This document shows positions 26,676-61,685 of a stretch of 64,000 bases of DNA, one piece after another. Both the position numbers and the translations under genes were made by a program. The notes beneath the pieces were generated by a model. The model saw nothing but the letters and a program-made list of their open reading frames with translations. It did not search any database and was not told the origin of the DNA. Source of the DNA: Macrostomum lignano (Eukaryota). The stretch's first letter is position 1. Each line of letters begins with the position of its first letter. Location: the NCBI GenBank assembly GCA_002269645.1, contig NIVC01002775.1, positions 62,001-126,000 on the forward strand. Reading direction: 5' to 3'.

Positions 26676-27221
<546 letters not shown>

Positions 27222-27699: not shown

Positions 27700-29100
27700 A
27701 GTAATCTACTACTATAGACTCCTGTCTGTAGACTTGGACATCAAGTGATCTATAGACTCCTGTCTGTAGAATTGGACATCAATCAAGTGATCTAAAGACT
27801 CCTGTCTGTAGTATTGGACATCAATCAAGTGATCTATAGACTCCTGTCTGTAGTATTGGACATCAATCAAGTGATCTATAGACTCCCGTCTGTAGAATCG
27901 GACATCAATCAAGTGATCTATAGACTCCTGTCTGTAGAATTGGACATCAATCAAGTGATCTATAGACTCCTGTCTGTAGAATTGGACATCAATCAAGTGA
28001 TCTATAGACTCCTGTCTGTAGAATTGGACATCAATCAAGTGATCTATAGACTCCTGTCTGTAGAATTGGACATCAATCAAGTGATCTATAGACTCCTGTC
28101 TGTAGAATTGGACATCAATCAAGTGTTCTATAGACTCCCGTCTGTAGAATTGGACATCAATAGAGTGATCTATAGACTTCCGTCTGTAGAATCGGACATC
28201 AATCAAGTGATCTATAGACTCCCGTCTGTAGAATCGGACATCAATCAAGTGATCTATAGACTCCTGTCTGTAGAATTGGACATCAATCAAGTGATCTATA
28301 GACTCCTGTCTGTAGAATTGGACATCAATCAAGTGTTCTATAGACTCCCGTCTGTAGAATTGGACATCAATCAAGTGATCTATAGACTCCCGTCTGTAGA
28401 ATTGGACATCAATCAAGTGATCTATAGACTCCTCTCTCTAGACCTGGAGATTAAGTGATCTATAGGCTCTTGTCTCTAGACTTGGACATTTAGTAATCTA
28501 CTGCTATAGACTCCTGTCTGTAGACTTGGACATCAAGTGATCTATAGACTCCTGTCTGTAGAATTGGACATCAATCAAGTGACCTATAGACTCCTGTCTG
28601 TAGAATTGGACATCAATCAAGTGATCTAAAGACTCCAGTCTGTAGAATTGGACATCAATCAAGTGATCTATAGACTCCTGTCTGTAGTATTGGACATCAA
28701 TCAAGTGTTCTATAGACTCCCGTCTGTAGAATTTGACATCAATCAAATGATCTATAGACTCCTGTCTGTAGAATTGGACATCAATAGAGTGATCTATAGA
28801 CTTCCGTCTGTAGAATCGGACATCAATCAAGTGATCTATAGACTCCTGTCTGTAGAATTGGACATCAATCGAGTGATCTATAGACTCCTGTCTGTAGAAT
28901 TGGACATCAATCAAGTGATCTATAGACTCCTGTCTGTAGAATTGGACATCAATAGAGTGATCTATAGACTTCCGTCTGTAGAATTGGACATCAATCAAGT
29001 GATCTATAGACTCCTGTCTGTAGAATTGGACATCAATCGAGTGATCTATAGACTCCTGTCTGTTGAATTGGACATCAAGTGATCTACAGGCTCCTGTCTG
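27700..29100. repeat. 42-bp minisatellite (GATCTATAGACTCCTGTCTGTAGAATTGGACATCAATCAAGT) in two blocks, with degenerate flanks (27530-29230)
   Basis: Tandem units; the spacer at about 27650-27720 recurs at 28430-28510. Confidence 0.95.
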
Positions 29101-29982
29101 TAGACTTGAAGATCAAGAAGTGATCTATAGACCCATGTCTAGACTTGAAGATTAAAAAGTAATCTGTAGACTGTCTGTCTCTAGACTTGGACATCAATTG
29201 ATTTATAGACCCATGTCTCTGCTTTGAGTTCAAACAATCTAGACTTTGTCCTAGCTTTATCATTGGAATTCTCAAGATAATCTCGCCAAAACCGAGAATT
29301 AAAGTTCGCATTTCAAAAAGAAAGCTTTTATTAATTTATTGCTACAAGCTTAAGACTGAAAAATGGAGTCTATTAAATCCTGCTTGTAGTTTTATGTTAT
29401 CTCTTCTCTCTGTTCGATTTAGCTTCTGTTAAAATTTGACTATTGGTTAACCGTCACCGACTTTTCTTGTAGCCTGACCGATTCTACATAGCCATGGAGT
29501 CATGGACCCCTTATTGAGACTGGACTGGACTAGCAACAAATTCTATAAATATTAAGCTACCGGTGCTCTGACTTTTGGGTATAGAAAGCTATTTAAAAAC
29601 GGAGATTTTGATTCTAAAGTAATCAATGCTTCTATACTTCTAGTCCAGTCCAAGTGCTTACTATATTAACAGAAGTCCTTGTCTGGACTATCCGTATCTG
29701 GTATAATGGTGTACACACAGTCACCTCAACCGCTCTGCAATCCATGCTACTATACTCTATATAGGCCGAATCTGGTTCAATGCGGTCACTTCAAAAGGCA
29801 TGCAGATATGGTGTGACTTGCGCATAGATTGCGAAAAATTCATTCTGTAACATATCTTACGGTATGTGCCAAGGCCTATCGCTAAAAACAGCTGTTATAA
29901 ATAGGACTACAGTTCAAAAACTGACGCTTGAAGAAAGCAAACTACTGCAGGAGTTCTTGTTGAAACTTTTAAAAGAAGCATT

Positions 29983-32900
29983 ATGGCCAGCACGGTCGAG
30001 TTGTCCAACTCTCCAGAAACCGAAGGCCAACAAGACCATGACTCTTCAATTGACTATCTGGTGCACAGAAAGGTGTACAACTACGCCAAGTTTACCGCCG
30101 ATGAAGGCGAAGCTATTAAAAAGAATCGTTCGCTTCGTCGAGAGATTACCAGCGGACTCAAAGACACCTGCGTGCCAGAGAAGCCAACGCTTCAACGCTT
30201 GATTCCGTTCATTGGTTTGCTGCAGTCTGGCCAGTACAAGACTGACGATTTTGTGTCCGACCTCATTGCCGGTGCAACCATGTGCGTCTTCCACATTCCG
30301 CAGGGCCTAGCCTATAGCCTGTTGGCCGGCCTGAAACCCATCACCGGACTGTACACCTCGCTAATCCCGGTACTGATCTTTGCCGTGTTTGGCAGATCGC
30401 GTCATCTGTCTATTGGCACATATGCTGTTCTGTCACTGATACTGTTGGACATGATTGAAGAGCATCGCGGAGCCTATTTGCAGAGGATGCAGGATAACAA
30501 CATTACCGGAGCGTCGTTTGGATTCAACTACACCGATACAGACTATGCAAGACTGCAAATAGCGATGGTTGGCAGTTTTTCTGCTTCGCTAATTATGATG
30601 TTTATCGGCCTGTTCCGATTGGGTTTCTTCATGACTTACATTTCTGATTCTATGCTGAAAGGATTCACCACTGCTGCTGGAGTTCACGTGATGATGAGTC
30701 AGGTGCCACTGGTGTTTGGCGTTGAAGTCCCCAGAACGACCAGCAGGTTCAAGATTATCGGGGTGAGTTGCATGCATGTACACTGGGTGTTTTTGGGCAC
30801 ACCAGCAAGTTACCTTCTGTACTTTTAGACAGTAATGTACATGTACATGGTAACTTCTGACTATGCATGTTTTACATGTACAGCCTGTTAATGTACTTGT
30901 ATGTATAGGCTAAAGAATGTACTTTTACATCTACGTAATTTAGGCTACATCATGTACCTGTACATGTAGGCTATATCATGTATCTGTACATGTAGGATAT
31001 ATACATCATGTACTTGTTTACGTAAGCTATTGTACATCATGTACTTGTTCACGTAAGCTATTGTACATCATGCACTTATTCACGTAAGCTATTGTACATC
31101 ATGTACTTGTACATGTAAGCTACATCCTGTGCATGTTTACATGTATGTAGGCTACATAAGAATATAACCTTTTTACCTGTATGCTGTACTGCTGTTGTAT
31201 TGCTCATCTGTACAAGTTCATACATGTACATGTACTGCCGTCAAGTTAAATGTAACTTACAAGATAACCACATATGCTCAATGTGACTTATGTAAAAGTA
31301 CAAATTCCATGTTCGCAGACGCTCATCAACCTGTTCAAAGTGATTCACAAGACCAACTTTGTGACTCTGGGCCTATCGGCGGCCAGTTGCATCATACTTT
31401 ACCTGGTGCGCGAGTTCGTTAATCCCCGAGTTAAAAAGAAGATTCGAGTACCTTTGCCAATCGAACTGTTAATCATTATTGGCACCTTGCTGGTCTCATA
31501 TTTCGCCAAGTTGAACAGCGATTTCAATGTGTCCATCGTTGGCGAAGTGCCGCGCGGCTTACCGGCTCTCCTAGTGCCCGACATGGGATTTCTTCCCACT
31601 GTGTTTGCCTCCTCCATTCCGGTGGGAATTGTTGGCGGAATAGTGTCGATGTCATTGGCTAAGCTCTATTGCCTGCAGTTTCAGTACAGCTACGACTACA
31701 ATGAAGACTTTGCCATCCTGGGAGCCAGCAGTCTGGTGTCCAGCTTCTTCCAGTGCTTCTTCCCGTGTACAGCTCTGGCGAGAAACGCTGTGGTCGTGTC
31801 CGTGAGTAGATAACAGTCAAAAGCAGAGTATTGTGATCGCCATGTGTACAGGTAAAAGGGCCCCTTGTCCAGATGAATTGGCGAACCTGTCCCGATTGCC
31901 TGTTCCCAATACTTGCACCTCTTGGTTCTGGCACCCCCTTGGTGCTAAAGCCCCTTGGTGCTAGCGCCCCTTGATGTTACCAATATAGCACCACCCGATG
32001 GTATCCCATGATGGCGCCCCCTTTTGTGGGGCATCTGACACTGGCATCCCTCGATGTCGCCTTGCGCTGGCGCACCCTCAACAAAAAATCCTGTCTACGC
32101 CCTAGAGACGGGGTGCTTTCACAAGGTCGAAATTTCACAACGTCGAAAAGTAAATTATTTCACAAGGTCGAAACTTCACAAGGTCGAAATTTCATAACAT
32201 CGAAAACTTTAGCAAGAGACTTCATAAGGTCGAAATTTTACAAGGTCGAAATTTCATGACATCGAAAACTCAAAAATCAGCCACTTTTACAAGGTCGAAA
32301 CTTCACATGGTCGAAATTTCACAACATCGAAAACTCTAAAAGCAGCCACTTTCATAAGGTCGAAATTTCACAACACGAAACTCAAATAGCAGCCACTTTC
32401 ACAAGGTCGAAATTTCATAACATCGACACTAAAACTTATGAAAGTGGCTGCTATTTGAGTTTTCGACCTTGTGAAATTTCGACTTTATGAAGTCTCTTGC
32501 TAAAGCTTTCGATGTTGTGAAATTTCGACCTTGTGAAATTTCGACCTTGTGAAATTTCGACCTTATGAAGGAGGGTGCTTTTGACGTTGTGAAATTTCGA
32601 GTTTGTGAACCCCCCCCCCCCCCCCAGAGACTATTTACATGTTAAATAGCGTTTCAGTACTAAAGCAACTATTGCAAAAACAGCGAACATTCTGTAAACT
32701 CCAACAGGTTGGCATGAAGAGCCAGATGGCCAGCATTGTCAGCTGCGGTCTGATGCTGCTCGTACTGCTGCTAGTTGGCCCCCTATTCCACTCGGTGCCA
32801 ACCTGCGCTCTGGGCTCCATCATTATTGTATCCTTGATTGGCGTGATCAAGCAGGTGACGGAACTGCCGCAGATCTGGCGCATCTCCCGTATCGACTTCA

Positions 32901-34113
32901 GCGTGTGGCTGGTGGCAGCGCTCTCCGTGCTCATCCTGGATGTGACCCTCGGCTTGGCTATCGGTCTGGGCTTCACCCTGTTCTCCGTGATCCTGCGCAC
33001 CCAGTCGGCCAGAATAGCGGTCCTTGGCCGCATTGGCGTCACGGACATCTACAGAGATGTCCGCGAGTACCCAGCTGCCGAGGAGCTGCCGGGGCTGAAA
33101 ATTGTCCGTTTCGACGCTCCGTTGAACTTTGCCAACGCGGAACGATTACGGGATTTTGTGATGCAGCTGGTCGATGACTGCGCCAGGCCTGCAGACTCTG
33201 ATGATCAGGCTGGGAAGAGTTCGCGAGTGCACACCATCTTACTAGACTGCTCATCGTGGGTGTACGCCGATATGGTTGGCATCAGGACTGTGAAGGAGGT
33301 GAGCGTGCTGCCTCAGTACCCTGAGTCTCTATTTGGATGGGCCGCCTCCCCCAATAATCCTCAGGTAATGGTTCCAACTCCTCAGCTCCTCAGATGCTGG
33401 CCTCAAATTCTCTGATCCTCAGATATGGGTTCAGCACTTCCAGATCCTCAGGTGTGTTGATCATGCAATCAGATCCTCAGGTGTTGACCCCGCGATCAGG
33501 TCCTCAGGTGTTGACCCCTCAATCAGATCCTCAGGTGTTGACCCCGCGATCAGATCCTCAGGTGTTGACCCCGCGATCAGATCCTCAGGTGTTGACCCCT
33601 CAATCAGATCCTCAGGTGTTGACCCCGCGATCAGGTCCTCAGGTGTTGACCCTGAGTCAGCGGAATGGGCAGAATTGCCTCGATGTCGCTGAATGCATTG
33701 CGTCAAAGTGCTCCGCCTTCAGTTATTATTTTTACTATCCCAGATCCTTAGGTGCTCATCCTACCCTATAAAAAACACTTTTAACTGTACAACACATGCA
33801 ATCGTCAGTCAATCAATCAACCTGATCCCTCCAGGCTTACGCACTTCTACTCAGCCGAAACTATCGCGTACTGTTTGCCGCTTGCAAAGATTCGGTTCGA
33901 CTGCTCTTCTTCCAGGAGGATTTCCTGAAAGACGCTGACGTATCTCTTTTTTATCTCACTGTACACGACGCCGTGCTGTTTGCCAGTCGCGTGGCACCGA
34001 ATAACCAGGCAGAGACGGTCAGTGAAGTTCAAGAAGTCAAAGACACCATGGCAATTGAAATGACGAACCGTCCCGATTCTGCTAACAACGACGCTGGAGT
34101 GGCGCTGATTTGA
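29983..34113 (+). CDS. SLC26 (prestin/pendrin-like) anion transporter, full length with STAS; exons 29983-30762, 31319-31801, 32708-33298, 33835-34113; about 710 aa
   Basis: SDLIAGATMCVFHIPQGLAYSLLAGLKPITGLYTS, GRSRHLSIG, GFTTAAGVHV, PLNFANAE and ILLDCSSWVYADMVG (STAS), FYLTVHDAVLFA; all introns GT-AG, phase 0. Confidence 0.93.
32110..32625. mobile_element. Palindromic MITE/foldback in SLC26 intron 2 (GGGG...CCCC ends, CACAAGGTCGAAATTT subrepeats, AGAGAC flanking duplication)
   Basis: Subrepeats switch orientation at about 32430; AGAGAC lies at 32104-32109 and 32626-32631. Confidence 0.75.
33465..33655. repeat. 27-bp minisatellite (GATCCTCAGGTGTTGACCCCGCGATCA), about 7 copies, SLC26 intron 3
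   Basis: Direct inspection. Confidence 0.9.
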
Positions 34114-35858
34114 ACTTCGTTTTTGTTTTAGTAGTTGTATAACTCGAACGAAATAGTGCGGTTTTTTAATCTTTCGTACTATTGATAATTTTACTTTATT
34201 ACCAAATCCGCGCTAGAAATATGACGTTATTATGTGACCTTTTTTCTATTTTTTTTGGAGCGTTTGTAACACAGCAGTTATGTCTGTGAAAAAATTGTTA
34301 GATCAAAACGGCTCTCGCTTGTCTCTCAGTCAGAAATCTGCGTGTTTGTCTCTGGCCCAACCTGCTGTCTCTTCTCTAGGCTTGGATGTCCATTTTTTAA
34401 CTTTGCATGGCAACAGCCACGATTTAGAAACATTTCTGTTTGTTATCATTGCCGAATAATCAAAGCAACTTAAAGATATGTTACAGACCATACAGACTAT
34501 CCATGAGTGACAACTACTGATTCGGAATTGGTAAGTAGCTGCAACGCAACTGGTAATATTTTTTCAATTAAATTTATTATGACTTGTTTTATTTTAAATA
34601 ATATATCTTATATGAGATGCGAGATATATTACAAGATTTACAAGAAATCAAGGATGCATAACTGAGAGATGCATGATAGAGTTCATGATCTTGGATGATG
34701 GTTCAACATAGCAATTCAAACGGCGTCTGTACGAGCGTATAATGAATGTCATTGCACCTACACCGATTAAGTAACCTTGAACTTGGGTACAGGTATTTTT
34801 TGGAAATCATGAGAATGCACTAAAACATGCAGTAGAAACTTTGCGTATATAAGCAGAAGCATTTAAATGTCATTAAGACAAAAGGGGTCGTACTATAAAG
34901 CTGTCGTAGCGTAAGTTCGATCGCACTTCGAAAATTTTACACTGCGGAGATAGGAGATAAGAACGATCTTATCTTAAGATTGCTTTGTCGAACGGGCCCA
35001 AAGTCATTTATTACGACGTAGCTCTGAGTCTTAAAACCCCTTAGATGAACCGCCGAGCATGTCTTTCCGCACAAAACCTCTTACCCATCCAATTTTTATT
35101 GCCCTCCCCGGGTTCCAGCCTAAAGCTGGTATGTACATTGCAGAAGCGCTGGCTATAATGTACATTAGCGCTTATCCAACAGCAATTTGTTTACGTCTGC
35201 AGGCTAGGCTTCTAATCCTTAAATCATTTTAACTGCCTTACTTTTAACTTTTCATAAAATAGCTTATGATCTTTTAAACTTGAACTGAAAGTAGACAATC
35301 CATCCATTCATTCATACAAAATGGCTAAGATCTGTTGTTGTGTCAGTAGTAGGCATGAGGGGGCTTTTAGGAAATTTTTTACTTCCTATATAATCCCATT
35401 TTTATCTATATTGGCAAAGCAATTGGCAATAAGGTAGAAGGTCAACTTGAATAAAAAATCTTCCAACACAATACTTTTATCTGCTGCTTGCTTAATTCCG
35501 ATAGCAATGCCATGCATCATGAATGAAAAAAGCTTTGACAGTGGGGCGCTTGTACTAAAACAGAAACGGAAAAATCCAATCAAACTATCTGTTTATTTTC
35601 AATATAGAGTTGCAATACTTCCTGCACTGGAGTTTTATCAATTAGCCTTTTAATTTTTATCAGATTCAGATAAATCCGTAAATCTATAAAGTCCGGGCAC
35701 ATTTTCACTTGATTCATACGGTCTATTGTTATGGTGCTAGTCACTTGTCAAAGTTGATAGATTTAAAAAATGCACAGAACTGAAAACTGTTGCTCACTGT
35801 CTGCCGAGTTGTGGAACTCTGGTAGTGCTCATGAGACACACCATCTGCACAGCAGTTT

Positions 35859-37694
35859 TTATTTGCTTGTCCTGCCCGCCGCACCAATCATCATCGGGTA
35901 CTTTGTCGCCGAATCGACTCTGCTGACGTCAACAGCGGCACTGCTGCTGCCGTTTTTGTTGCTGCTGTATCTGACACGGATCTTTGACCCTCGACGACGA
36001 GCGTCTCGAGCATCGCTGTCTCCGGGCTGACCTTCACGCCGAGTAGCCATGCAGCGCGTGACCAGAGTGCAAGCCAGCGAATAGCAGAATCCCACAGCCA
36101 GGCCAAGAGACACGTCCAGCACGAGGACAGACACAGCGGTCAGAAGCCAAGTGCTCAAGTCCAGGTACTTGGCTTCACGCCACAGTTTAGGAATATCGGT
36201 CACTTGTTTGAACACCCCGACTAAGGACACGACGATGACGGAGGCCAGAGCGCATTCGGGAACGGCTTCGAATAGAGGAGCAACTGCTAGCACAACCAGT
36301 AGCACGACGAGGCAGCTCACTGCTGATGCCACCTGCGACTTCATGCCCGCTCCGACCACCACGGTGCATCGAGCCAGCGCGCCAGTAGCGTAGAAGCACT
36401 GGAAGAAGCTGCCAAACAGACTGGACGTTCCAAGTACAAAGAGCTCTCCATTGTAATTAACTTCATAGTCAAACTGCAAAGCGTACATTTTCCCGATAGA
36501 CAGGGACATGGCCGCGCCGACTAAACTAACAGGCAGGCACGGGAGCAGGACGTTTGGCATGAAGGAGAAATCCGGTACTAGCGGTAGCGGCAAGCCTCTC
36601 GGGACGGTTCCGACTACGTCAACGCTGAAGCGCGACTGCAATTGCAACGCGTGTGACGCCACCAGCGCCGATAAAATGATGAGCAGTTCAACTGGCAGTG
36701 GAACTTTGATGCACTTTTTGACGCGCGGATTCAGGTACTCTTTCATTAAGTAGAGCGGCACCATGCACGCAACGGAGGTGATTACGGTGGTCCAGTTAGT
36801 CGACGCGATGTCGTTAAATATTCCGGTGTAGCTGGCAATCAGTTTAACAAAGTTGTCGCCGCTAGTTGGCTGAACGCCCAGCAGCATCGGCACCTGGCTG
36901 GTGAAAATGTGAACAGCTGCGGCTGTTGTAAAGCCGCGAAGCATCGGGTTGGAGACGTACTTCATCACAAAGCCGAGCTGCAAGGTGCCGAGTGCCATGT
37001 TGATTACTGATGCCGCAAAACTGCCTAAAACGGCGACTTGAAGTCTAGCGTATTCTTCCACGGTGAGTCCTCCGTAGTACTCATCGGAGTCGCTGGAACA
37101 GTCGGCATTTAGATTGATCTCATCAACTTCTGAGTATAAAGAGCAATTACTTATGGTGCTGTTAGAGCCCGGAAGCTGGTCCATGTACTGACGATAGGTC
37201 GTCCCGATCATGTCCGCTAGCAGCAGCGAGGTCAGCGAGAAAGTGCCTATTGATTGGTGAAGCGACCTGCCTATCAGAGAGTAGAGAGCCACGGGTATCA
37301 GCGAAGTGTACAGGCCGTTGATGGGTTTTAAACCAGCCAGCAAGCTATTGGCCAGGCCTTGTGGTATGTGAAAGACGCTCATTGTTAACCCGGCGAGCAG
37401 GTCCGACACCAGAGCTTTGCTTGAGTAGCTTCCGCCAGAGATCAGGGAATAGAACGGGAACAACAGCTGGAACAAGCTCTCGGCTCGGTGCTTCAGCGCT
37501 ACCATCGTTGGCTCGCTGCAGCATGAGTTGCAGCAATTACTGCAGCGACCGCGAAACGGCTTCTTACCGAGCAGGCCTCGTCGTCTCGTTGTTGAAGATC
37601 CGTACAGATGGTGCAAATCGTCCGACAACAACGGAACTGTTTCCGATCGAGTGCTCTCCAACAGGTCAGCCTCTGATTCAGTTGCCGTTGTCAT
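35859..37694 (-). CDS. Intronless SLC26-family transporter lacking the STAS domain (copy 1), 611 aa
   Basis: SDLLAGLTMSVFHIPQGL, GLYTS, GFTTAAAVHIFTSQ, GMKSQVAS and DLSTWL; after the last TM helix there is only a polar tail of about 55 aa, then the stop. Confidence 0.9.
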   Translation of the reverse strand: MTTATESEADLLESTRSETVPLLSDDLHHLYGSSTTRRRGLLGKKPFRGRCSNCCNSCCSEPTMVALKHRAESLFQLLFPFYSLISGGSYSSKALVSDLLAGLTMSVFHIPQGLANSLLAGLKPINGLYTSLIPVALYSLIGRSLHQSIGTFSLTSLLLADMIGTTYRQYMDQLPGSNSTISNCSLYSEVDEINLNADCSSDSDEYYGGLTVEEYARLQVAVLGSFAASVINMALGTLQLGFVMKYVSNPMLRGFTTAAAVHIFTSQVPMLLGVQPTSGDNFVKLIASYTGIFNDIASTNWTTVITSVACMVPLYLMKEYLNPRVKKCIKVPLPVELLIILSALVASHALQLQSRFSVDVVGTVPRGLPLPLVPDFSFMPNVLLPCLPVSLVGAAMSLSIGKMYALQFDYEVNYNGELFVLGTSSLFGSFFQCFYATGALARCTVVVGAGMKSQVASAVSCLVVLLVVLAVAPLFEAVPECALASVIVVSLVGVFKQVTDIPKLWREAKYLDLSTWLLTAVSVLVLDVSLGLAVGFCYSLACTLVTRCMATRREGQPGDSDARDARRRGSKIRVRYSSNKNGSSSAAVDVSRVDSATKYPMMIGAAGRTSK

Positions 37695-38079
37695 GATCTC
37701 CCCGCGGAGCCTGTCCGACGAAATTCCGTGCTAAAAACTGCGACAAAAAAAGTTTTTGCGAGCGCAATAAAAAGCTCCTTACACGCTAAACTAGATCGAG
37801 CGCATTGCTTAAGAATAGAAGCAGAGAGAGATCTCACCCTAATGGGCGAACTGGTTGCAACGCCTATGCCAGATTGATACTCTTATCAATTCGAAACATT
37901 TTGAGAGCAATTTTTGACCGCACTTTGAGGGAGCGCCTGCCGTTATTCTCATATAATATTTGGCATGTGTCGTGGCTTTTTACTAAAGCACCAATAGACG
38001 GTAGGTCGTTATTAATTGTCAGTACTGTACAATTTATCGCATGTCGATCTTCACAATTTTTAACATTTGTCATCTGCGG

Positions 38080-38540
38080 CAGATCTGGCGCATCCCCCAT
38101 ATCGACTTAATCATGTGGCTGGTGGCAGCGCTCTCCGTACTCATCCTGAATGTGAGTTGGCTATCGGTCTGGGCTTCACCCTGTTCTCCGTGATCCTGCG
38201 CACCCAGTCGGCCAGAATAGCGGTCCTTGGCCGCATTGGCGACACAGACATCTACAGAGACGTCCGCGAGTACCCAGCGGCAGAGGAGCTGCCGGGACTG
38301 AAAATGGTCTGTTTCGACGCTCCGTTGAACTTCGCCAACGCGGAACGATTCCGGGACATTGTGCTGCAGCTGGTCGATGACTCTGATTGTCTCATTTTTA
38401 TCTCACTGTGAACAACGCCGTGCTGTTTGCCAGTCGCGTGGCACCGATTTACAAGACAGAGACGGTCAGTGAAGTTCAAGGAGTCAAAGACACCATTGTA
38501 ATTGAAATGACGAACCGTCCCGATACTGCTACCTCGTAAC
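38080..38540 (+). pseudogene. Internally deleted SLC26 fragment (end of the TM domain and start of STAS fused to the end of the last exon), followed by a copy of the 3' UTR to about 39020
   Basis: Near-identical to 32870-33180, then jumps to sequence matching 33950-34090; frame broken, premature stop at 38411. Confidence 0.88.
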
Positions 38541-39746
38541 AACGAGGTTGGGGTGGTGCTGATTTTAACTTAAGCTTTTGTTGTTTTAGTAGTCGCATAA
38601 TCCGAACGAAATAGTGCAGTAGTTAAATTTTATTACGAATAGTTTTTTATTACCAAATCTAACGCTAGAAATACGAAGTTATAAAGTGCACGTCATAAAT
38701 CATTATGTATTTTTTACTTTGCGCGTTTGTATCACAGCAGTTATGTCTGTGAAGAAATATTTTTAGTTCAAAACGGTGCTCGATTGATTCTTAGTCAGAT
38801 ATAGGCGTGCTTGTCTCTGGCCCAAACTGCTGTCTCTTTCTCTTGGCTTTGGGTGTCTTTTAGCATGGCTTAGCATGACTTAGCATGGCAACAGCCACGA
38901 TTTTGAAACATTTCCGTTTGTCATCAATGCCGAATCAAAGCAACTTTGATACGCATTTTTCGTACTAACTTTAAGTGACAACTATACTGACATCGGTATT
39001 GGTAAGTTGTAGCACCGCAACTGGCAATTTTTTCTTCTATTGATTTTTCTTAGTACAATCCATCACAATATACTGTATTGTTGGAGAATAGGGGAGTTTG
39101 AGAATGCGGTACTGTGAGGGATTCAGGTGGGTGAGGGGCGGAGAAACTGGGGGCGATGTACGCGAATGGTTGCTAGTGTAAAGTATAAAAAAGCAACGCT
39201 ACTGCCAGTCACTGTGCAGAGAGAATAACGCACAGACCTCACATGGCCGAACTAATGATTATATATTAAACGAGTGCAGTTAGTCATCTGTTAGCTTACG
39301 GCGAGGGCGGGGGCGGAAAATTGACGTGAATAGTAAAAGTTAAGCGAGCAAGTACAAGTCCGAAAGAAACATAACAGAGGTTTAAGCTTTAGAGACGTTA
39401 ATACAATAAGTGGGTCTGTTGCGTGAGCATTGAGTAAATAGCAGCGGGAAAAAGGAAGTGAGTGTACGGAATGGTTGGGGCGGGTGGTGAAGCAGACACG
39501 AAGGGGCGGTCAACGTTAAAAAATATACGTTTAAAACACCGTTCGTACTGTGTGTACAAATAATTATTGAATGGTAACTATAAAAATAATAACTAGTAAA
39601 AATCTGGATAAAAGTATTTCATTCAAAGCTTCTTTTCTAAATATTACAATTTATGATATGATATCCAAAGCCAAGGAAACACCGTCACAAAGTAAAAAAT
39701 AATCAGGAAGTTTATTAAGTTCACTTCAAACTTCACCTACAAAGCT

Positions 39747-40299: not shown

Positions 40300-41413
40300 T
40301 TTTGTCAACTCCGAAAGTTATTTTAAAACATGCGAAAATTCACTATATAGTTTTTATATTGTGAAATTAACAAGAGTGCAGAGCAGTGCGACTGCGCGTC
40401 AGCACTGGCATACACATATATAGAGATGAGGGAAGGGAGGGACCGAGAGAGGAAGAGAGAGGAAGAAAGACTTTAAAATACACTGGCCCCTAAAGGCATT
40501 GTTATGAGTGTGAGGCTCACATCCGCCGTACGGAATATTATTCAAGGCAGTGTACTTTTTAGTCAATGAGAGCCCACAGGCACAATGCAAAAGCAATGAA
40601 TGGCTTTGAGCCGGGTTAGGGTTAGCGCCGAAGCAGTTTCTCCCTGTGCCGTTGTTAGGCAACCCTCGGTAGTAAGCGTTTTTACGCGGATGGCTCGTTT
40701 TTGCATGGCGAAACCAATAGGAAGTCCCAACCACTAATCGATGCATTCTGTCCTGCCCAAGCGCGTTTACAAAATCTCGCCCCCTACATTTTCTTTCTAG
40801 GCTCGCGGCCACCACTCCACAGACCAATAAGTATAACTAGATTGCGCGTGAGGGGCAAGAAATATGTGTCTCTTCCAAGTAGGAAAAATGCAGGGACTCC
40901 TAAAAATAGCATCACTATTTTTGCTAGCTCTAGAAGTCCCTGGAAAATGGTACCCCAGCTCCCTACCCCTCACGATCGATAGCAAGGTCTCATTGGCTTC
41001 CTTACCCCTCAATCATTGCTTAAAACTTATTGATTCAGAGTTACTAAGAATACTGTTAGACTTTTGGGCCCGCTGTATTAATTGTTGCCCTTTGCCTTGG
41101 GACTCGGATTGCTAACCATTTAAATTTATGTGGTATTAAACAATTAAGCAGTTTAAATATGCCGTATTATTTTAATGATTTATGATAAAGGCATATATCA
41201 AAAACTAAAATATACTCTTCCGGACAAAATGAGACCTTTTTGTTGGAGATACAATAGAAACAATATAATAAGAGTAAATGTCTGAGAGCCATCAAATTCT
41301 AAGCTCACCTTCACGTGGTTCTAAGACTAAATTATTATTTTTATTTGGAACCAGCTTTTTAGTCTTAAGCTTGAAGTAGTCTTTGCCTTCTTCCAGATTT
41401 CTCGACATGCGCA

Positions 41414-42527
41414 AAGTCTCGTGAACTGCTACGTCACTGGAGAATTGGCTTTTAAAGTCTCGTGAACTGCTACGTCACTGGAGAATTGGCTGTTAAAGTC
41501 TCGTGAACTGCTACGTCACTGGAGAATTGGCTGTTAAAGTCTCGTGAACTGCTACGTCACTGGAGAATTGGCTGTTAAAGTCTCGTGAACTGCTACGTCA
41601 CTGGAGAATTGGCTGTTAAAGTCTCGTGAACTGCTACGTCACTGGAGAATTGGCTGTTAAAGTCTCGTGAACTGCTACGTCACTGGAGAATTGGCTGTTA
41701 AAGTCTCGTGAACTGCTACGTCACTGGAGAATTGGCTGTTAAAGTCTCGTGAACTGCTACGTCACTGGAGAATTGGCTGTTAAAGTCTCGTGAACTGCTA
41801 CGTCACTGGAGAATTGGCTGTTAAAGTCTCGTGAACTGCTACGTCACTGGAGAATTGGCTGTTAAAGTCTCGTGAACTGCTACGTCACTGGAGAATTGGC
41901 TGTTAAAGTCTCGTGAACTGCTATCGTCACTGGAGAATTGGCTGTTAAAGTCTCGTGAACTGCTACGTCACTGGAGAATTGGCTGTTAAAGTCTCGTGAA
42001 CTGCTACGTCACTGGAGAATTGGCTGTTAAAGTCTCGTGAACTGCTATAGTCACTGGAGAATTGGCTGTTAAAGTCTCGTGAACTGCTATCGTCACTGGA
42101 GAATTGGCTGTTAAAGTCTCGTGAACTGCTACGTCACTGGAGAATTGGCTGTTAAAGTCTCGTGAACTGCTACGTCACTGGAGAATTGGCTGTTAAAGTC
42201 TCGTGAACTGCTATCGTCACTGGAGAATTGGCTGTTAAAGTCTCGTGAACTGCTACGTCACTGGAGAATTGGCTGTTAAAGTCTCGTGAACTGCTACGTC
42301 ACTGGAGAATTGGCTGTTAAAGTCTTGTGAACTGCTACGTCACTGGAGAATTGGCTGTTAAAGTCTCGTGAACTGCTACGTCACTGGAGAATTGGCTGTT
42401 AAAGTCTCGTGAACTGCTATCATCACTGGAGAATTGGATGTTAAAGTCTCGTGAACTGCTATCGTCACTGGAGAATTGGCTGTTAAAGTCTCGTGAACTG
42501 CTATCGTCACTGGAGAATTGGCTGTTA
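41414..42527. repeat. 41-bp minisatellite (AAAGTCTCGTGAACTGCTACGTCACTGGAGAATTGGCTGTT), about 27 copies
   Basis: Highly homogeneous array abutting the Gypsy LTR end. Confidence 0.97.
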
Positions 42528-42691
42528 CAGCTGGGGGGCGATCGCGTCTATTTATTAAAAATAAAGTACAGTTAGTTTGGGGCTGCAACCGAGAGTTGGA
42601 GTTTGGGCCATAGACAACCTAGCTTGTGGGCACTCAAAAGAAAGTACTTTTAATGAACGCAGGGACCGTAGGAAACAAGGCGTTATAAACA
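42523..42691 (-). mobile_element. 3' LTR (169 bp; TGTT...AACA) preceded by a polypurine tract (GGGGGGAAG)
   Basis: Minus strand: PPT at about 42700-42692, then TGTTTATAAC; AATAAA about 25 nt before the terminal GTAACA. Confidence 0.7.
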
Positions 42692-43900
42692 CTTCCCCCC
42701 AACGGAAAAGCGAACAACTATAAACGATGTTTCGCGATCAGTAGGGTTAATTTATTCCTGTTTGTTTGTTGAGTGTTCGATAAGGGATTGTTGATCAATA
42801 ATCAATAACGTGAACCGTCGGCTTCTCGGAAAAACGAAGGCGTTGGGTTTCCTTCGCGGGACGCTGTTTCTTCGCAGGGGTAGTCGCTGGCTTGTCCGGC
42901 CGTGCCTCTCTCGTCATTGCTCGGGTCTGGCGCTGACTGTCCGGTAGCACTGCCGGCTTCACTCTCTCGATGGAAACGGCCTGGGGCTTGCCTTTTAAGA
43001 CGAGCGTCACGGTGGTCGCTGAGCGTCACAACACCTTGTAGGGTCCTTGATATGGCGCCTCGAGCGGTTACTTAACTGTGTCAACTCGGAGCCACATAAA
43101 CTCGCAGGATTCCAGCTCCGGAGGTATGTGGACAGGCTGCTGACGGGTCCGCGGCAGGAGGTACGGGAAAAACAGGTCGTGTAGTTGAGTCGACAGCTGA
43201 CGCTGGTCGTCGTCATCAGTTGTGACCGGTGAAACTAGCGGCTGTTCTTCCGTGACGATTGAGAATGGCGAGTGACCCTGGTCGTCGGGGTTAATGCGCA
43301 ATCCGAATAAAACGATGGGCAGCTGGTTAAGCCAGCACCGGCCGCGAGCTCTGAGGCTGGCCTTCAGTGTGCGATGAACTCGCTCGATCATACCGTTGGC
43401 CTTAGGATTATATGCGGCTGTGCGGATGTGATGGACACCGAGAAGATTCACCAGGTTTGCCATTAGGTCCGAGCGAAATTGAGCTCCTTGGTCTGTGATG
43501 AGTGTTAACGGTGGGCCAAATCGACAAACCCAGTGGGCGACAAAGGCTTGTGCAACAACCGTACTGGTGATCGATTGCAATCGGATTGCTTCGACCCAGC
43601 GGGAGTACGAGTCCACGATGGTTAGTAAATACCGCGGCTGGGGTGCAGCTGTTTCGGTTGGGTCCGGCACCGGGAGCGGTCCGACTAAATCCATGTGTAC
43701 CGTTGTGAACCGCTGTGTAGGTGCAGGCAGGTGGTGCAGTGGTCGGCGAACATGACGACCGATTTTCGCTGATTGACATTGTGTGCATTCCGCCGTCCAG
43801 CGCTGTATGTCTGATTTCATGCATGGCCAGAAAAAATGATGGGCGACTAAACGCAGCGTGGCCTTCACACCTGGGTGGTAAGGCGGTGGAGGTAAAAGTA

Positions 43901-49010: not shown

Positions 49011-49119
49011 GCATCCACCAGACAATAAGTAGCTAGTGCGACAATTTCTTTAGCATTATAGCGGCTCCTTTAAAATTCACTTACTTTTACATTTGAAATT
49101 GTGTATATTTTATGTTTAA

Positions 49120-58620: not shown

Positions 58621-58884
58621 GCTTTACAGAGGATTTGGAGATGATTTGGAAGATGGGATTTAAGTCATGGGGTTTCAGCTGATGGATTTCAGGGAATGGA
58701 ATTCCGGTGATGGGAGTTCTTCCCCTTTCTCCTCCGAAGGAGGCGTTCGACTCGTAATTAATAGTAATGTCATAAGTTAGTCTAGACGAGAGAATATAGA
58801 GAAAATCCTAAGCTAGCCTACTGACAGTAGGGGAAAGGCGCATCGAAGCAAAATGTGCGGTTTTTAATTTTTATCATCTAACAG

Positions 58885-59360
58885 CGATGTTAGAGTGGCG
58901 CTGATTTGAACTTCGTTTTTGTCTTAGTAGTTGTATACTTCGAACGAAATAGAGCAGTTATTTTTATCTTTATTACTAAATATTCCTTATTACCAACTCT
59001 ATATCGAGAAATACACAACGTTGTAAAGTGCATCCTTTATTTTGTATTTTTCATTTGGGGCGTTTGGAACACAGCAGATATGTTTGTGAATAAAATCGTC
59101 AAGTCAAAAACGGTGCTCGCTTGTCTCAGTCAGAAAGCTCCGTGCTTGTCTCCTGGCCCAACATGCTGTCTCTGTTCTCTAGGCTTGTATCTTTGGATGT
59201 CCTTTTTAAACTTAGTATGACAACAGCCATATTTTACAAATAGCTTCGTTCGTTATTATTAGCCGAATAATGCAAACAACTTTCTATACATGCTTCGGAC
59301 CAACTATTGATGTGTGACAATTATACTGTCATTGGGATTCGTAAGTGGCAACGCAACAGG
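58885..59360 (+). pseudogene. Third copy of the extreme 3' end and 3' UTR of the full-length SLC26 gene
   Basis: GAGTGGCGCTGATTTGAACTTCGTTTTTG... matches 34097 onward and 38555 onward. Confidence 0.8.
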
Positions 59361-59852
59361 CACTTTTTCAATTTAGCTTTCCATTGTTAAATAATATCTT
59401 CAATCTTATACTCAGCAACATTGAAGGGTCGCCACTCTATGAATTTCTCTTCAAGGACTATTCTGAAATCAAAGATGCGAGAAAACTGATCGGGGTCAGG
59501 TAGCTTTAATTCGCCAAGCCCTCGCACACCGCCCCCCCACTTTATTCCTCAACTCAAGTCTGCACTTTCTTACTCTACTTGAGCAATGAGCAATCGATCA
59601 CTGTATAATAACTATACTGTATTGTCTGGAAACAAGGGAGTTTGAGAATGCGATTTTTCGTCCTCAAACAAACATTAGTCCTTGAGTAAATCCCTGAATC
59701 GGAGCAAATTTTCGCTTTATTCATTCCAGCTTTATTCGCTTGTCACATGTCGAAATAGGAAAGTTTTCATAAATCTACAAACAACTGAAAACTGTTGCTC
59801 ACTGCTGTCGAGTTGTCAAACTCTATGCAGTGCTCTATGAGCCACAATAGTT

Positions 59853-61685
59853 TTATTTGCTTGTCCTGCCCGTCGGACCAATCATCATCGGGTACTTTGT
59901 CGCGGAATCGACTCCGCTGACGTCAACAGTGGCGCTGCTGCTGCCGTATTTGTTGTTAAAACTGACGCTGATCTTTGACCCTCGACGACGAGCATCTCGA
60001 GTATCGCCGTCTCCGGGCTGACCTTCACGCCGAGTAGCCATGCAGCGCGTGACCAGAATGCAAGCCAGCGAATAGCAGAATCCCACAGCCAGGCCGAGAG
60101 ACACGTCCAGCACGAGGACAGACACAGCGGTCAGTAGCCAAGTGCTCAAGTCCAGGTACTTGGCTTCACGCCACAGTTTAGGAATATCGGTCACTTGTTT
60201 GAACAACCCGACTAAGGACACGACAATAACGGAGGCCAGAGCGCAGTCGGGAACGGCTTCGAACAACGGGCCAACTGCTAGCACAACCAGTAGCAAGACG
60301 AGGCAGCTCACTGCTGATGCCACCTGCGACTTCATGCCCGCTCCGACCACCACAGCGCATCGAGCCAGCGCGCCAGTAGCGTAGAAGCACTGGAAGAAGC
60401 TGCCAAACAGACTGGACGTTCCCAGTACAAAAAGTTCTCCATTGTAATTAACTTCATAGTCAAACTGCAGGGCGTACATTTTCCCGATAGACAGGGACAT
60501 GGCCGCGCCGACTAAACTAACAGGCAGGCACGGGAGCAGGACGTTTGGCATGAAGGAGAAATCCGGTACTAGCGGTAGCGGCAAGCCTCTCGGGACGGTT
60601 CCGACTACGTCAACGCCGAAGCGCGACTGCAATTGCAACGCGTGCGACGCCACCAGCGCCGATAAAATGATGAGCAGTTCAACTGGCAGTGGAACTTTGA
60701 TGCACTTTTTGACGCGCGGATTCAGGTACTCTTTCATTAAGTAGAGCGGCACCATGCACGCAACGGAGGTGATTACGGTTGCCCAGTTAGTCGACGCGAT
60801 GTCGTTAATTATTCCGGTGTAGCTGGCAATCAGTTTAACAAAGTTGTCGCCACCAGTTGGCTGAACGCCCAGCAGCATCGGCACCTGGCTGGTGAAGATG
60901 TGAACAGCTGCGGCTGTTGTAAAGCCGCGAAGCATCGGGTTGGAGACGTACTTCATCACAAAGCCGAGCTGCAAGGTGCCAAGCGCCATGTTGATTACTG
61001 ATGCCGCAAAACTGCCTAAAACGGCGACTTGAAGTCTAGCGTATTCTTCCACGGTGAGTCCTCCGTAGTACTCATCGGAGTCGCTCGAACAGTCGGCATT
61101 TAGATTGATCTCATCAACCTCTGAGTATAAAGAGCAATTACTTATGGTGCTGTTAGAGCCCGGAAGCTGGTCCATGTACTGACGATAGGTCGTCCCGATC
61201 ATGTCCGCTAGCAGCAGCGACGTCAGCGAGAAAGTGCCTAGCGATAAGTGACGTGACCTCCCTAGCAGAGAGTAGAGAGCCACGGGTATCAGCGAAGTGT
61301 ACAGGCCGTTGATGGGTCTTAGACCGGCCAGTAAGCCATAGGCCAGGCCTTGTGGTATGTGAAAGACGCTCATTGTTAACCCGGCGAGCAGGTCCGACAC
61401 CAGAGCTTTGCTTGAGTAGCTTCCGCCAGAGATCAGGGAATATAACGGGAACAACAGCTGGAACAAGCTCCCGGCTCGGTGCTTCAGCGCTACCATCGTT
61501 GGCTCGCTGCAGCATGAGTTGCAGCAATTACTGCAGCGACCGCGAAACAGCTTCTTACCGAGCAGGCCTCGTCGTCTCGTTGTTGAAGATCCGTACACAT
61601 GGTGCAAATCGTCCGACAACAATGGAACTGTTTCCGATCGAGTGCTCTCCAACAGGTCAGCCTCTGATTCAGTTGCCGTTGTCAT
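59853..61685 (-). CDS. Intronless SLC26-family transporter lacking the STAS domain (copy 2), 610 aa
   Basis: Collinear paralog of 35859-37694 with canonical QGLAYGLLAG and GRSRHLSLG motifs; same STAS-less tail ending ...GRTSK*. Confidence 0.9.
   Translation of the reverse strand: MTTATESEADLLESTRSETVPLLSDDLHHVYGSSTTRRRGLLGKKLFRGRCSNCCNSCCSEPTMVALKHRAGSLFQLLFPLYSLISGGSYSSKALVSDLLAGLTMSVFHIPQGLAYGLLAGLRPINGLYTSLIPVALYSLLGRSRHLSLGTFSLTSLLLADMIGTTYRQYMDQLPGSNSTISNCSLYSEVDEINLNADCSSDSDEYYGGLTVEEYARLQVAVLGSFAASVINMALGTLQLGFVMKYVSNPMLRGFTTAAAVHIFTSQVPMLLGVQPTGGDNFVKLIASYTGIINDIASTNWATVITSVACMVPLYLMKEYLNPRVKKCIKVPLPVELLIILSALVASHALQLQSRFGVDVVGTVPRGLPLPLVPDFSFMPNVLLPCLPVSLVGAAMSLSIGKMYALQFDYEVNYNGELFVLGTSSLFGSFFQCFYATGALARCAVVVGAGMKSQVASAVSCLVLLLVVLAVGPLFEAVPDCALASVIVVSLVGLFKQVTDIPKLWREAKYLDLSTWLLTAVSVLVLDVSLGLAVGFCYSLACILVTRCMATRREGQPGDGDTRDARRRGSKISVSFNNKYGSSSATVDVSGVDSATKYPMMIGPTGRTSK

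What the first reader, a model, noticed from the sequence alone, without database searches (positions are those of the whole stretch)
35859..37694. Conserved STAS-less SLC26 transporter, present in two diverged copies next to a full-length SLC26
Seen: both minus-strand ORFs (611 and 610 aa; second copy at 59853-61685) encode a complete SLC26 membrane domain. They then stop after an unrelated Arg/Ser-rich tail of about 55 aa, with no STAS. The two tails differ by many third-position changes and a frame-preserving one-codon indel, yet end at the same GRTSK-stop. Established: animal SLC26 proteins carry a C-terminal STAS domain important for dimer assembly, trafficking and regulation. Inference: this is a selected STAS-less subfamily, not decay. 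It could be a constitutive channel or transporter, or a membrane-only partner or dominant modulator of the tail-to-tail full-length paralog at 29983-34113.
Basis: partly seen in the sequence, partly recalled or inferred. Interest (0 to 1): 0.72.

Follow-up and report, generated by a model that had tools for sequence, protein, structure and literature searches.

The report
STAS-less SLC26 anion transporter genes in a flatworm
The flatworm Macrostomum lignano carries intronless genes for an SLC26-type anion transporter that has a complete membrane domain but lacks the cytoplasmic STAS domain found in other animal SLC26 proteins; the main gene type looks kept by selection, while the copy at the flagged coordinates may be drifting.

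Summary
The window is Macrostomum lignano contig NIVC01002775.1. Both minus-strand ORFs are real: A (35859-37694, 611 aa) and B (59853-61685, 610 aa). Each has a full PF00916 domain and a confidently modelled SLC26 membrane fold. Each ends in a 63-64 aa disordered tail. No STAS coding exists on that strand anywhere in the window, nor within 10 kb downstream of three further B-type copies on other contigs.

B-type copies carry transcript-derived GenBank models. They show purifying selection in the core (pN/pS 0.13, p=1e-15) and, more weakly, in the tail (5 synonymous vs 3 nonsynonymous sites, p=0.02).

Copy A is different:
- It has no gene model.
- Its tail differs from B mostly by amino-acid changes (11-13 nonsynonymous vs 5-6 synonymous), not third-position changes.
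- It carries radical replacements at family-conserved sites (Y116N, R145L).
- Its flanks are 21-41% diverged while its CDS is about 4% diverged, which points to gene conversion.

The family's N-terminal 'Y.V.RP.Y' motif is also absent. In SLC26A9 the N-terminus docks on STAS, so the loss is probably old.

No ortholog or tail relative was found outside M. lignano. A role as modulator of the neighbouring full-length paralog is untested.

Verdict: a real, lineage-specific STAS-less SLC26 variant; function unproven.

The parts
35859..37694 (-). Copy A: intronless CDS of 611 aa plus stop, a STAS-less SLC26. It has no GenBank gene model.
36138..37412 (-). Copy A, PF00916 (Sulfate_transp) match, residues 95-519
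35859..36053 (-). Copy A tail (residues 548-611) plus stop. AATAAA at 35858-35863 overlaps the stop codon.
59853..61685 (-). Copy B: intronless CDS of 610 aa plus stop. It is identical to annotated protein P0097 on contig NIVC01002775.1.
60129..61403 (-). Copy B, PF00916 match, residues 95-519. The AlphaFold2 model is confident across residues 61-550.
59853..60044 (-). Copy B tail (residues 548-610) plus stop. It is predicted disordered and contains RRRGS at residues 566-570. AATAAA at 59852-59857 overlaps the stop codon.
35778..37957 (.). High-identity duplicated block (93.3%) shared with 59783-61953. Identity collapses outside it.
29983..34113 (+). Full-length SLC26 paralog P0004 (710 aa, PF00916 plus STAS). 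Exons: 29983-30762, 31319-31801, 32708-33298, 33835-34113, all GT-AG. Tail-to-tail with copy A.
38047..38536 (+). Pseudogene fragment of a P0004-like gene. It covers parts of exon 3 and exon 4, including pieces of STAS, in two reading frames.
58878..59368 (+). Relic of the 3' end and 3' UTR of a P0004-like gene beside copy B. It is homologous to 34082-34471 and 38537-39032.

Best explanation
The B-type gene is a genuine, expressed, selectively maintained member of the SLC26/SulP family. It is seen as window copy B plus its allelic or homeologous copies C, D and E in the redundant DV1 assembly. It has lost both cytoplasmic elements of the canonical architecture: the C-terminal STAS domain and the family's conserved N-terminal motif (in SLC26A9 the N-terminus binds STAS).

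What remains is the 14-helix (7+7 inverted-repeat) membrane domain, flanked by a disordered 60-aa N-terminus and a disordered 63-aa C-terminal tail. The N-terminus carries an ETVPLL acidic di-leucine motif and a CxxCCxxCC cluster. The tail carries a conserved RRRGS site.

Inferred mechanism: it works as an autonomous elevator-type anion transporter or exchanger. The translocation path lies wholly within one membrane domain. It may be monomeric or may dimerise through the small TM13/TM14 membrane interface. Sorting and regulation would come from short linear motifs in the tails rather than from STAS.

Copy A (35859-37694) is an old tandem paralog. Its coding sequence has been kept close to the B type largely by gene conversion. 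Where it has not been converted it shows relaxed or altered constraint.

Shown here: architecture, fold, absence of STAS coding, purifying selection on the B type, and the mosaic divergence pattern. Inferred: transport activity, oligomeric state, and the meaning of the motifs.
For: Architecture and fold:
- PF00916 is matched end to end with no STAS hit.
- phmmer alignments to prestin, SLC26A6, pendrin and SLC26A2 stop right after TM14.
- The AlphaFold2 model has pTM 0.72. The core (residues 61-550) is confident; residues 1-60 and 551-610 have pLDDT below 50.
- Foldseek's top hits are prestin, SLC26A6 and pendrin, with E 1e-31 to 1e-27.

Absence of STAS:
- A STAS HMM run with --max against all six-frame ORFs of the window finds only the P0004 exons and the 38064-38536 fragment, both on the + strand.
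- Nothing is found within 10 kb downstream of copies C, D and E.
- The tail is not more similar to STAS than shuffled tails are.

Selection on the B type:
- Among B-E, the core has 49 synonymous and 19 nonsynonymous sites (pN/pS 0.13, p=1.5e-15).
- The tail has 5 synonymous and 3 nonsynonymous sites (0.18, p=0.02).
- Of the columns at least 80% conserved in 47 STAS-bearing homologs, B deviates in the core at only two (G229S, N425S). Its STAS-bearing sister genes share both. B keeps E417, L418 and R442.
- In an NJ tree, A and B are sister to M. lignano P0003/4/5 and are no further from outgroups than those sisters (39-42% vs 40-44% identity).

Expression:
- B, C, D and E have GenBank models.
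- That annotation was built from a genome-guided transcriptome (PMC5730564).
- The model for copy C spans a 17.8-kb mobile-element insertion as a non-GT-AG 'intron'.

Old loss of the cytoplasmic module:
- The 'Y.V.RP.Y' N-terminal motif is present in the sister genes and in most animal SLC26 proteins aligned, and is absent here.
- In SLC26A9 the first 30 N-terminal residues bind the STAS domain (PMC8298490).

Feasibility of a STAS-free transporter:
- AtSULTR4;1 without STAS is monomeric and keeps reduced transport (PMC8298490).
- SLC26Dg without STAS still dimerises, with reduced transport (PMC6497670).

Gene conversion into A:
- A versus B-type flanks differ by 21% (5') and about 41% (3'), with 5-11 gap events per 300 nt. 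The CDS differs by 3.7-4.4% with one in-frame indel.
- A-specific differences cluster at nt 346-445, 1415-1422 and 1678-1816.
- An A/B mosaic copy exists in an older assembly's gene model.
Against: - No transcript reads, poly(A)-site data or copy-specific expression could be examined. Expression rests on the stated provenance of the annotation.
- No ortholog from any other species was found. Long-term conservation therefore rests on the tree position and on copies within one genome.
- The four B-type copies are alleles or homeologs. Their pN/pS partly reflects polymorphism.
- Selection on the tail rests on only 8 variable sites.
- One B-type copy (C) is interrupted by a mobile element.
- In most eukaryotic SLC26 proteins tested, removing STAS abolishes or strongly reduces transport or trafficking (as summarised in PMC8298490 and PMC6497670). 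A STAS-less animal protein may therefore be poorly active.
- A potential splice donor (GAAG|GTCAGC at codon 555) lies inside the tail and cannot be ruled out from sequence alone.
Confidence: 0.6

Rival explanations
1. The STAS-less protein is mainly a membrane-only partner. It would heterodimerise through TM13/TM14 with full-length SLC26 paralogs (P0004, P0003, P0005) and modulate or poison their transport, rather than transporting on its own.
For: - The genes sit in a cluster of SLC26 paralogs. A is tail-to-tail with P0004, and C is head-to-head with a P0005-type gene.
- The membrane dimer interface does not need STAS, and protomers in SLC26 dimers interact functionally (PMC6497670).
Against: - Clustering is simply what tandem duplication produces.
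- B, the best-conserved copy, has no intact full-length neighbour at its 3' side, only a 3'-UTR relic.
- Substrate-site residues (E417, R442) and all core-conserved columns are retained. A pure scaffold would not need them.
- There are no co-expression or interaction data.
Confidence: 0.15
2. The lineage is non-functional or on its way out. On this view it is a truncated duplicate whose open frame persists through recent origin and gene conversion among copies. For copy A specifically, this reading means an unexpressed pseudogene-in-waiting that B-type sequence periodically overwrites.
For: - A has no gene model.
- A has radical changes at sites conserved in 22-27 of 29 homologs: Y116N, R145L, G472A.
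- A's tail dN/dS is 0.6-0.8, not significantly below 1.
- The mosaic divergence pattern indicates conversion.
- Copy C is disrupted by a 17.8-kb insertion.
Against: - For the B type, pN/pS is 0.13 (p=1e-15) across four copies, and the tail also leans towards constraint.
- Divergence from the sister genes is deep (54% identity) without any extra loss of family-conserved residues.
- No stop codon or frameshift occurs in any of five copies, although flanks show 5-11 gap events per 300 nt between A and B.
- Conversion can only preserve A if a selected donor exists.
Confidence: 0.15
3. The STAS-less appearance is an annotation or reading artefact. On this view the real mRNA splices from within the tail to distant or highly diverged STAS exons.
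For: - A plausible donor (GAAG|GTCAGC) lies at codon 555 in both copies.
- One chance-level STAS-like ORF (4.6 bits, E 3.9) lies at 34592-34702 (-), downstream of A.
Against: - No significant STAS coding lies on the minus strand in the 35 kb (A) or 59 kb (B) of window downstream, nor within 10 kb downstream of C, D and E.
- The weak ORF has no counterpart near B.
- All four transcript-derived models, and an independent older-assembly model (P0002), end at GRTSK.
- AATAAA overlaps the stop codon.
- The tail among B-type copies shows coding-like constraint.
- The N-terminal motif is gone too.
Confidence: 0.05

Closest known systems
Canonical animal SLC26A transporters (prestin/SLC26A5, SLC26A6, pendrin/SLC26A4, SLC26A2, SLC26A9)
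   Same: - The PF00916 membrane domain is present and complete.
- Identity to the closest animal homologs is about 33-40% (prestin-type and SLC26A6-type).
- The predicted 14-helix fold superposes on solved structures (TM-score about 0.69).
- Core-conserved residues, including E417 and R442, are retained.
   Different: - There is no STAS domain.
- There is no 'Y.V.RP.Y' N-terminal motif.
- The cytoplasmic ends are short and disordered.
- The CDS is intronless.
M. lignano full-length paralogs P0003 (Mlig014609), P0004 (Mlig000540) and P0005
   Same: - They are the sister clade in the tree.
- Core identity is 53-55%.
- They lie in the same genomic cluster.
- They share the lineage-specific substitutions G229S and N425S.
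   Different: - The sisters keep STAS, the N-terminal motif and three or more introns. P0004's introns fall after residues 260, 421 and 618.
- The STAS-less genes have none of these features.
- Homology ends inside what is exon 3 of P0004, not at an intron position.
Engineered STAS deletions (AtSULTR4;1 without STAS; SLC26Dg without STAS; BicA membrane-domain construct)
   Same: The architecture is the same: membrane domain only. These constructs show that the membrane domain folds, can still transport at a reduced rate, and (for SLC26Dg) can still dimerise (PMC8298490, PMC6497670; PDB 5iof and 6ki1 appear among the fold hits).
   Different: Those are laboratory truncations of proteins that evolved with STAS. 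This is a natural gene. It shows sequence constraint and has also remodelled its N-terminus.
Plant 'SULTR group 5' / MOT1 molybdate transporters
   Same: They are natural eukaryotic relatives of SULTR/SLC26 that lack the STAS domain (PMC4158793).
   Different: They are a distant, separate family and are no longer counted as SULTRs. They are not close relatives of the flatworm genes, which nest inside the animal SLC26A clade.

Membership tests
SLC26/SulP anion transporter family | Full-length Sulfate_transp (PF00916) membrane domain | tested here: met
   Both ORFs match profile positions 1-380 of 380, with E 2.9e-87 and 3e-91.
SLC26/SulP anion transporter family | 14-TM 7+7 inverted-repeat fold | tested here: met
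   In the AlphaFold2 model, residues 61-550 are confident. Foldseek matches to prestin, SLC26A6 and pendrin have E down to 4e-31 and TM-score about 0.69.
SLC26/SulP anion transporter family | C-terminal cytoplasmic STAS domain (PF01740) | tested here: not met
   There is no Pfam STAS hit. A STAS HMM finds nothing in the ORFs or downstream on their strand. The tail is no more similar to STAS than shuffled tails.
SLC26/SulP anion transporter family | Conserved N-terminal cytoplasmic motif ('Y.V.RP.Y') in the segment that binds STAS in SLC26A9 | tested here: not met
   The motif is present in P0003-P0005 and in most animal homologs aligned, and absent from all five STAS-less copies. Its structural role is taken from PMC8298490.
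SLC26/SulP anion transporter family | Family-conserved core residues, including the TM10 Arg and the NQEL Glu | tested here: met
   B and A deviate at 2 of the core columns that are at least 80% conserved, and their sister genes share both deviations. E417, L418 and R442 are kept. A additionally has Y116N, R145L and G472A.
SLC26/SulP anion transporter family | Anion transport or exchange activity; dimeric assembly | not testable with these tools
   This needs flux or electrophysiology assays and biochemistry.
Processed retrogene | Lacks the introns of its paralogs | tested here: met
   The CDS is a single ORF. P0004 has three GT-AG introns, two of them inside the region homologous to the ORF.
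Processed retrogene | Poly(A) tract, target-site duplication, and an identifiable parent gene | tested here: not met
   No A-tract follows the 3' end. The nearest paralogs are only 53-55% identical. A-versus-B homology continues weakly into both flanks and into a neighbouring gene relic, which indicates DNA-level duplication.
Decaying pseudogene | Frame disruptions, or dN/dS near 1 | tested here: not met
   None of five copies has a stop codon or frameshift. Core dN/dS is 0.11-0.22. The A-lineage tail is the exception, with dN/dS 0.6-0.8 that is not significantly below 1.

The most novel reading that the evidence does not exclude
A natural animal SLC26 has dispensed with its whole cytoplasmic module: STAS plus the conserved N-terminal motif. 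It nevertheless remains a working, selected anion transporter, sorted and regulated through short motifs in disordered tails. This would show that in animals the SLC26 membrane domain can be autonomous for folding, trafficking and transport. It would also provide a minimal natural scaffold for separating STAS-dependent from STAS-independent functions.
Probability: 0.45. Interest if true: 0.6.

Novelty: new variant of a known kind. Interest (0 to 1): 0.45.

Why it matters
In animal and plant SLC26 transporters, STAS is held to matter for dimer stability, trafficking, regulation and full transport rate, and disease mutations cluster there. A naturally STAS-less animal SLC26 under selection would be a ready-made test of what the membrane domain can do alone, and of how a cell targets and regulates it without STAS. 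M. lignano has RNAi and transgenesis, so the question can be tested directly.

The locus is also a clear example of tandem paralogs held together by gene conversion inside a highly redundant assembly.

Tried and rejected
1. STAS exon downstream. A STAS HMM built from 29 homologs was searched with --max against all six-frame ORFs of the window and of the flanks of copies C, D and E. The only minus-strand candidate, 34592-34702, scores 4.6 bits (E 3.9) and has no counterpart near B. I rejected it as chance.

2. Tail as a degenerate or frameshifted STAS. MAFFT lines up short collinear matches with the sister genes (GDxD, GxKI, xF-xN). Smith-Waterman scores against 29 STAS regions, and against the three sister genes under four gap regimes, fall within the range of shuffled tails (z -0.1 to 1.4). 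No other reading frame of the tail DNA hits the STAS HMM. Homology is not supported, though a very old in-frame remnant cannot be excluded.

3. Retrogene origin. Only the absence of introns fits. There are no poly(A) or target-site hallmarks and no close parent gene. The A-B duplication was at the DNA level.

4. Orthologs or relatives of the tail elsewhere. A word-indexed search and a full phmmer scan of 1.84 billion representatives found nothing between 53% and 98% identity. The nearest non-Macrostomum proteins are Schistosoma, Trichuris and similar, at 35-42%. No congener data appear to be in these collections, so the absence is uninformative about Macrostomum relatives.

5. An A-type copy on other contigs. 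This could not be reached, because look-ups work only from annotated proteins.

6. Literature. There is no paper text mentioning Mlig002287, Mlig034362 or Mlig000540. I found no description of a natural STAS-less animal SLC26.

The local HMM search replaced it.

8. The 17.8-kb insertion in copy C. In one search I sliced it out as a variable in a script before I knew what it was. I printed only its ends and ORF coordinates, and the slice itself was not written to disk. One caveat: before I knew what the insertion was, I had written the fetched loci to a scratch file, and locus L001 contains the element; one search read that file. Once the insertion looked like a Maverick/Polinton-type virus-like element, I handled it only ORF by ORF or excluded it, and I did not characterise it further.
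Full report
**Origin of the window**

Copy B's protein is an exact match to an annotated protein on Macrostomum lignano contig NIVC01002775.1 (assembly GCA_002269645.1, 141,444 bp). Window positions 1-64000 correspond to record positions 62001-126000. The window is rich in tandem repeats, as this genome is known to be (PMC5730564).

**The observation**

- ORF A (35859-37694, minus strand, 611 aa) and ORF B (59853-61685, minus strand, 610 aa) are present as described.
- They are 95% identical in protein, with one gap.
- Both match Pfam PF00916 over the whole profile, and neither matches STAS.
- phmmer alignments to solved SLC26 structures (prestin, SLC26A6, SLC26A2, pendrin, SLC26A3, SLC26A9) all end at query residue about 544-552, just after TM14.
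- An AlphaFold2 model of B (52-sequence alignment, pTM 0.72) is confident for residues 61-550. It is below pLDDT 50 for residues 1-60, the extracellular loop 177-206, and the tail 551-610.
- Foldseek places the model with prestin, SLC26A6 and pendrin (E down to 4e-31, TM-score about 0.69).
- The neighbour at 29983-34113 (+) has four GT-AG exons: 29983-30762, 31319-31801, 32708-33298 and 33835-34113. They translate exactly to P0004, a 710-aa protein with PF00916 and STAS.

So the architecture claim is correct. The tail is 63-64 aa rather than about 55 aa.

**Is a STAS exon hiding somewhere?**

I built a STAS HMM from 29 homologs and searched every six-frame ORF of at least 12 aa in the window with HMMER filters off.
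- The only real hits are the two STAS-coding exons of P0004 and a P0004-like pseudogene fragment at 38064-38536. All of these lie on the + strand.
- On the minus strand the best candidate is a 4.6-bit, E 3.9 match at 34592-34702. It is chance-level and has no counterpart downstream of B.
- The same search finds nothing on the gene's strand within 10 kb downstream of the three other copies.
- The tail itself is no more similar to STAS than shuffled tails are.
- Both copies have AATAAA overlapping the stop codon.
- A possible donor, GAAG|GTCAGC at codon 555, cannot be excluded from sequence alone, but there is nothing for it to splice to.

**More copies, and what they say about selection**

The 90%-identity cluster of the protein holds four annotated 610-aa proteins on four contigs. 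These are B, C (P0001, BOX15_Mlig002287g1), D (P0098, BOX15_Mlig002287g3) and E (P0099, BOX15_Mlig034362g1). All four have the same tail and stop.
- They are 97.4-98.4% identical in nucleotides.
- They fit the known redundancy of the DV1 assembly, which has extra chromosomes and 180 Mb in blocks at least 95% identical (PMC5730564).
- That paper also states that the GenBank annotation derives from a genome-guided transcriptome assembly. The four models therefore imply transcripts.
- In copy C the model bridges a 17.8-kb insertion at codon 516 as an 'intron' without GT-AG.

Selection among B-E:
- Core: 49 synonymous and 19 nonsynonymous variable sites (pN/pS 0.13, p=1.5e-15).
- Tail: 5 synonymous and 3 nonsynonymous (pN/pS 0.18, p=0.02).

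The B-type gene is thus under purifying selection, and its tail probably is too.

**Copy A is not simply 'the other copy'**

- A is 95.6-96.3% identical to every B-type copy.
- It has no gene model in the annotation around P0004.
- Core dN/dS against B-type copies is 0.16-0.22 (p below 1e-6).
- In the tail there are 10-13 nonsynonymous against 5-6 synonymous differences plus the codon indel. This gives dN/dS 0.58-0.77, not significantly below 1.
- A also carries Y116N, R145L, L147Q and G472A, at positions held by Y in 27 of 29, R in 22 of 29 and G in 22 of 29 homologs. The B-lineage changes are conservative: K to R, I to L, F to I.
- The flanks tell a different story from the CDS. Over the 300 nt upstream, A and the B types differ at 21% of sites with 5-7 gap events. 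Over the 300 nt downstream they differ at about 41% with 9-11 gap events. The 1.8-kb CDS differs at about 4% with a single in-frame indel.
- Synonymous divergence (0.08-0.11) is far below flank divergence. A-specific differences are clustered at nt 346-445, 1415-1422 and 1678-1816, while the first 340 nt of A fall inside B-type variation.
- A gene model from the older ML2 assembly (P0100) contains a B-type copy followed by an A-type copy. That A-type copy is A-like to residue about 445, B-like from 465 to 593, and A-like again at 606-607. This could also be an assembly chimera.

Together these results indicate an old tandem duplication whose coding regions have been partly homogenised by gene conversion. 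A's open frame therefore does not prove selection on A. The unconverted islands are exactly where A looks relaxed or altered.

**History of the locus**

- Relics of the 3' end and 3' UTR of a P0004-like gene lie at 33943-34569 (the real gene), at 38390-39041 (after pseudo-exons at 38047-38536) and at 58878-59368 beside B.
- The ancestral duplicated unit was therefore probably a tail-to-tail pair of a full-length and a STAS-less gene. The full-length partner of B has since been deleted.
- Homology with the full-length paralogs ends inside what is exon 3 of P0004, not at one of its intron positions.
- The STAS-less CDS lacks both introns that interrupt the homologous region of P0004. That fits an ancient retroposition, but no poly(A) tract, target-site duplication or close parent gene remains.

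**Age and coherence of the loss**

- In a neighbour-joining tree of the core, A and B are sister to the three M. lignano full-length paralogs. They are 53-55% identical to these, which are 75% identical to each other.
- A and B are no further from outgroups than their sisters are: 39-42% against 40-44% identity.
- Among the core columns at least 80% conserved in 47 STAS-bearing homologs, B deviates at only two, and its sisters share both. B keeps E417, L418 and R442.
- All five copies also lack the N-terminal 'Y.V.RP.Y' motif, which is present in the sisters and in most animal SLC26 proteins aligned. [quoted passage not shown]
- Loss of both halves of the cytoplasmic module, with a core that is otherwise conservative, argues for a long-standing STAS-free protein rather than a recent truncation.

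**How it most likely works (inference)**

- The complete substrate path of SLC26 proteins lies within one membrane domain.
- AtSULTR4;1 without STAS is monomeric yet still transports at a lower rate (PMC8298490).
- SLC26Dg without STAS still dimerises through the membrane interface around TM13/TM14, with reduced transport (PMC6497670).
- The B-type protein is therefore most simply an autonomous elevator-type anion transporter or exchanger.
- Sequence features conserved in all copies may supply the sorting and regulation that STAS normally contributes. These are an acidic di-leucine motif ETVPLL (residues 18-23), a CxxCCxxCC cluster (residues 51-59) before TM1, N-glycosylation sequons in the 177-206 loop, and a basophilic-kinase site RRRGS (residues 566-570) in the tail. 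These readings are motif-level inferences and have not been tested.
- The alternative, that it acts as a membrane-only partner of full-length paralogs, is possible but has no specific support beyond gene clustering.

**Comparison with what is known, and novelty**

- The proteins already exist in GenBank and UniProt as unnamed 'SLC26A/SulP transporter domain-containing' hypothetical proteins.
- I found no paper that discusses them, and none that describes a natural STAS-less animal SLC26.
- Natural STAS-less relatives are known in plants, as the former SULTR group 5, now the MOT1 molybdate transporters (PMC4158793). A few PF00916-only prokaryotic proteins also appeared among the hits.
- No ortholog or tail relative was found outside M. 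lignano. The collections seem to hold no congeners, so 'conserved subfamily' is untested.
- I classify this as a new variant of a known kind. It is of moderate interest and directly testable in a tractable model.

**Verdict**

- Observation: largely right.
- 'Selected, not decaying': supported for the B-type gene, doubtful for the flagged copy A.
- Functional proposals: remain hypotheses.

Noticed in passing
L001:11550-29386 (contig NIVC01001429.1), inside copy C at the position matching window ~60137-60140: A 17.8-kb insertion interrupts copy C at codon 516. It has a 6-bp target-site duplication (CATGGC), terminal inverted repeats of at least 39 bp, 33% GC and several long ORFs. One ORF has an rve integrase core (31.9 bits, just under the Pfam cut-off), one has endonuclease VII and one has an F5/8 type C domain. 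It looks like a Maverick/Polinton-type element. GenBank annotates it as a non-GT-AG intron of BOX15_Mlig002287g1.
   Followed up: partly
window 38047-38536 (+): A partial duplicate of P0004 exon 3 and exon 4 (TM13-14 and pieces of STAS; 91% nucleotide identity to 32864-33179). It has an internal deletion and a frame change. It lies just upstream of copy A on the opposite strand. An older gene model (P0100) reads its antisense strand as an exon.
   Followed up: partly
window 33943-34569, 38390-39041, 58878-59368: Three copies (74-79% identical) of the 3' end and 3' UTR of the P0004-type gene. They mark former tail-to-tail gene pairs created by tandem duplication.
   Followed up: partly
window 63332-63757 (+); also L001 7816-8229, L002 7798-8211: A small THAP-domain gene (137-141 aa) sits about 1.7 kb upstream of B-type copies B, C and D, on the opposite strand. 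A 38-nt tandem array (62378-62935) lies between it and copy B.
   Followed up: no
window ~26799-27221 (+): An annotated 140-aa ubiquitin / ribosomal L40e fusion gene, immediately followed by a 42-nt tandem array (27623-29198).
   Followed up: no
window 19711-21435 vs 44776-46101; 16165-17424 vs 23004-23670: Two pairs of inverted duplications (92-94% identical). The first pair lies in unusually GC-rich sequence (56-63% GC) that contains an 87-nt tandem repeat. 42530-48425 also matches two places in L001 at 97-98%. This is probably a repeated element, but its nature was not determined.
   Followed up: no
window 649-1184, 1490-2380, 3576-5765, 7263-10318, 41413-42527, 49108-51203, 52669-55122: Large tandem-repeat arrays with periods of 20-60 nt, up to 3 kb each, some with strong GC skew. 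They generate long spurious ORFs (for example 52931-55093, 720 aa).
   Followed up: no
P0100 (UniProt A0A1I8HLU6), older ML2 assembly: A fusion gene model named 'ATP-dependent DNA helicase' joins a B-type copy, about 400 aa of unrelated sequence (not scanned here) and an A/B-mosaic A-type copy. Apart from two short pieces, this middle part has no match in this window. The interval between B and A therefore differs between the two assemblies.
   Followed up: partly
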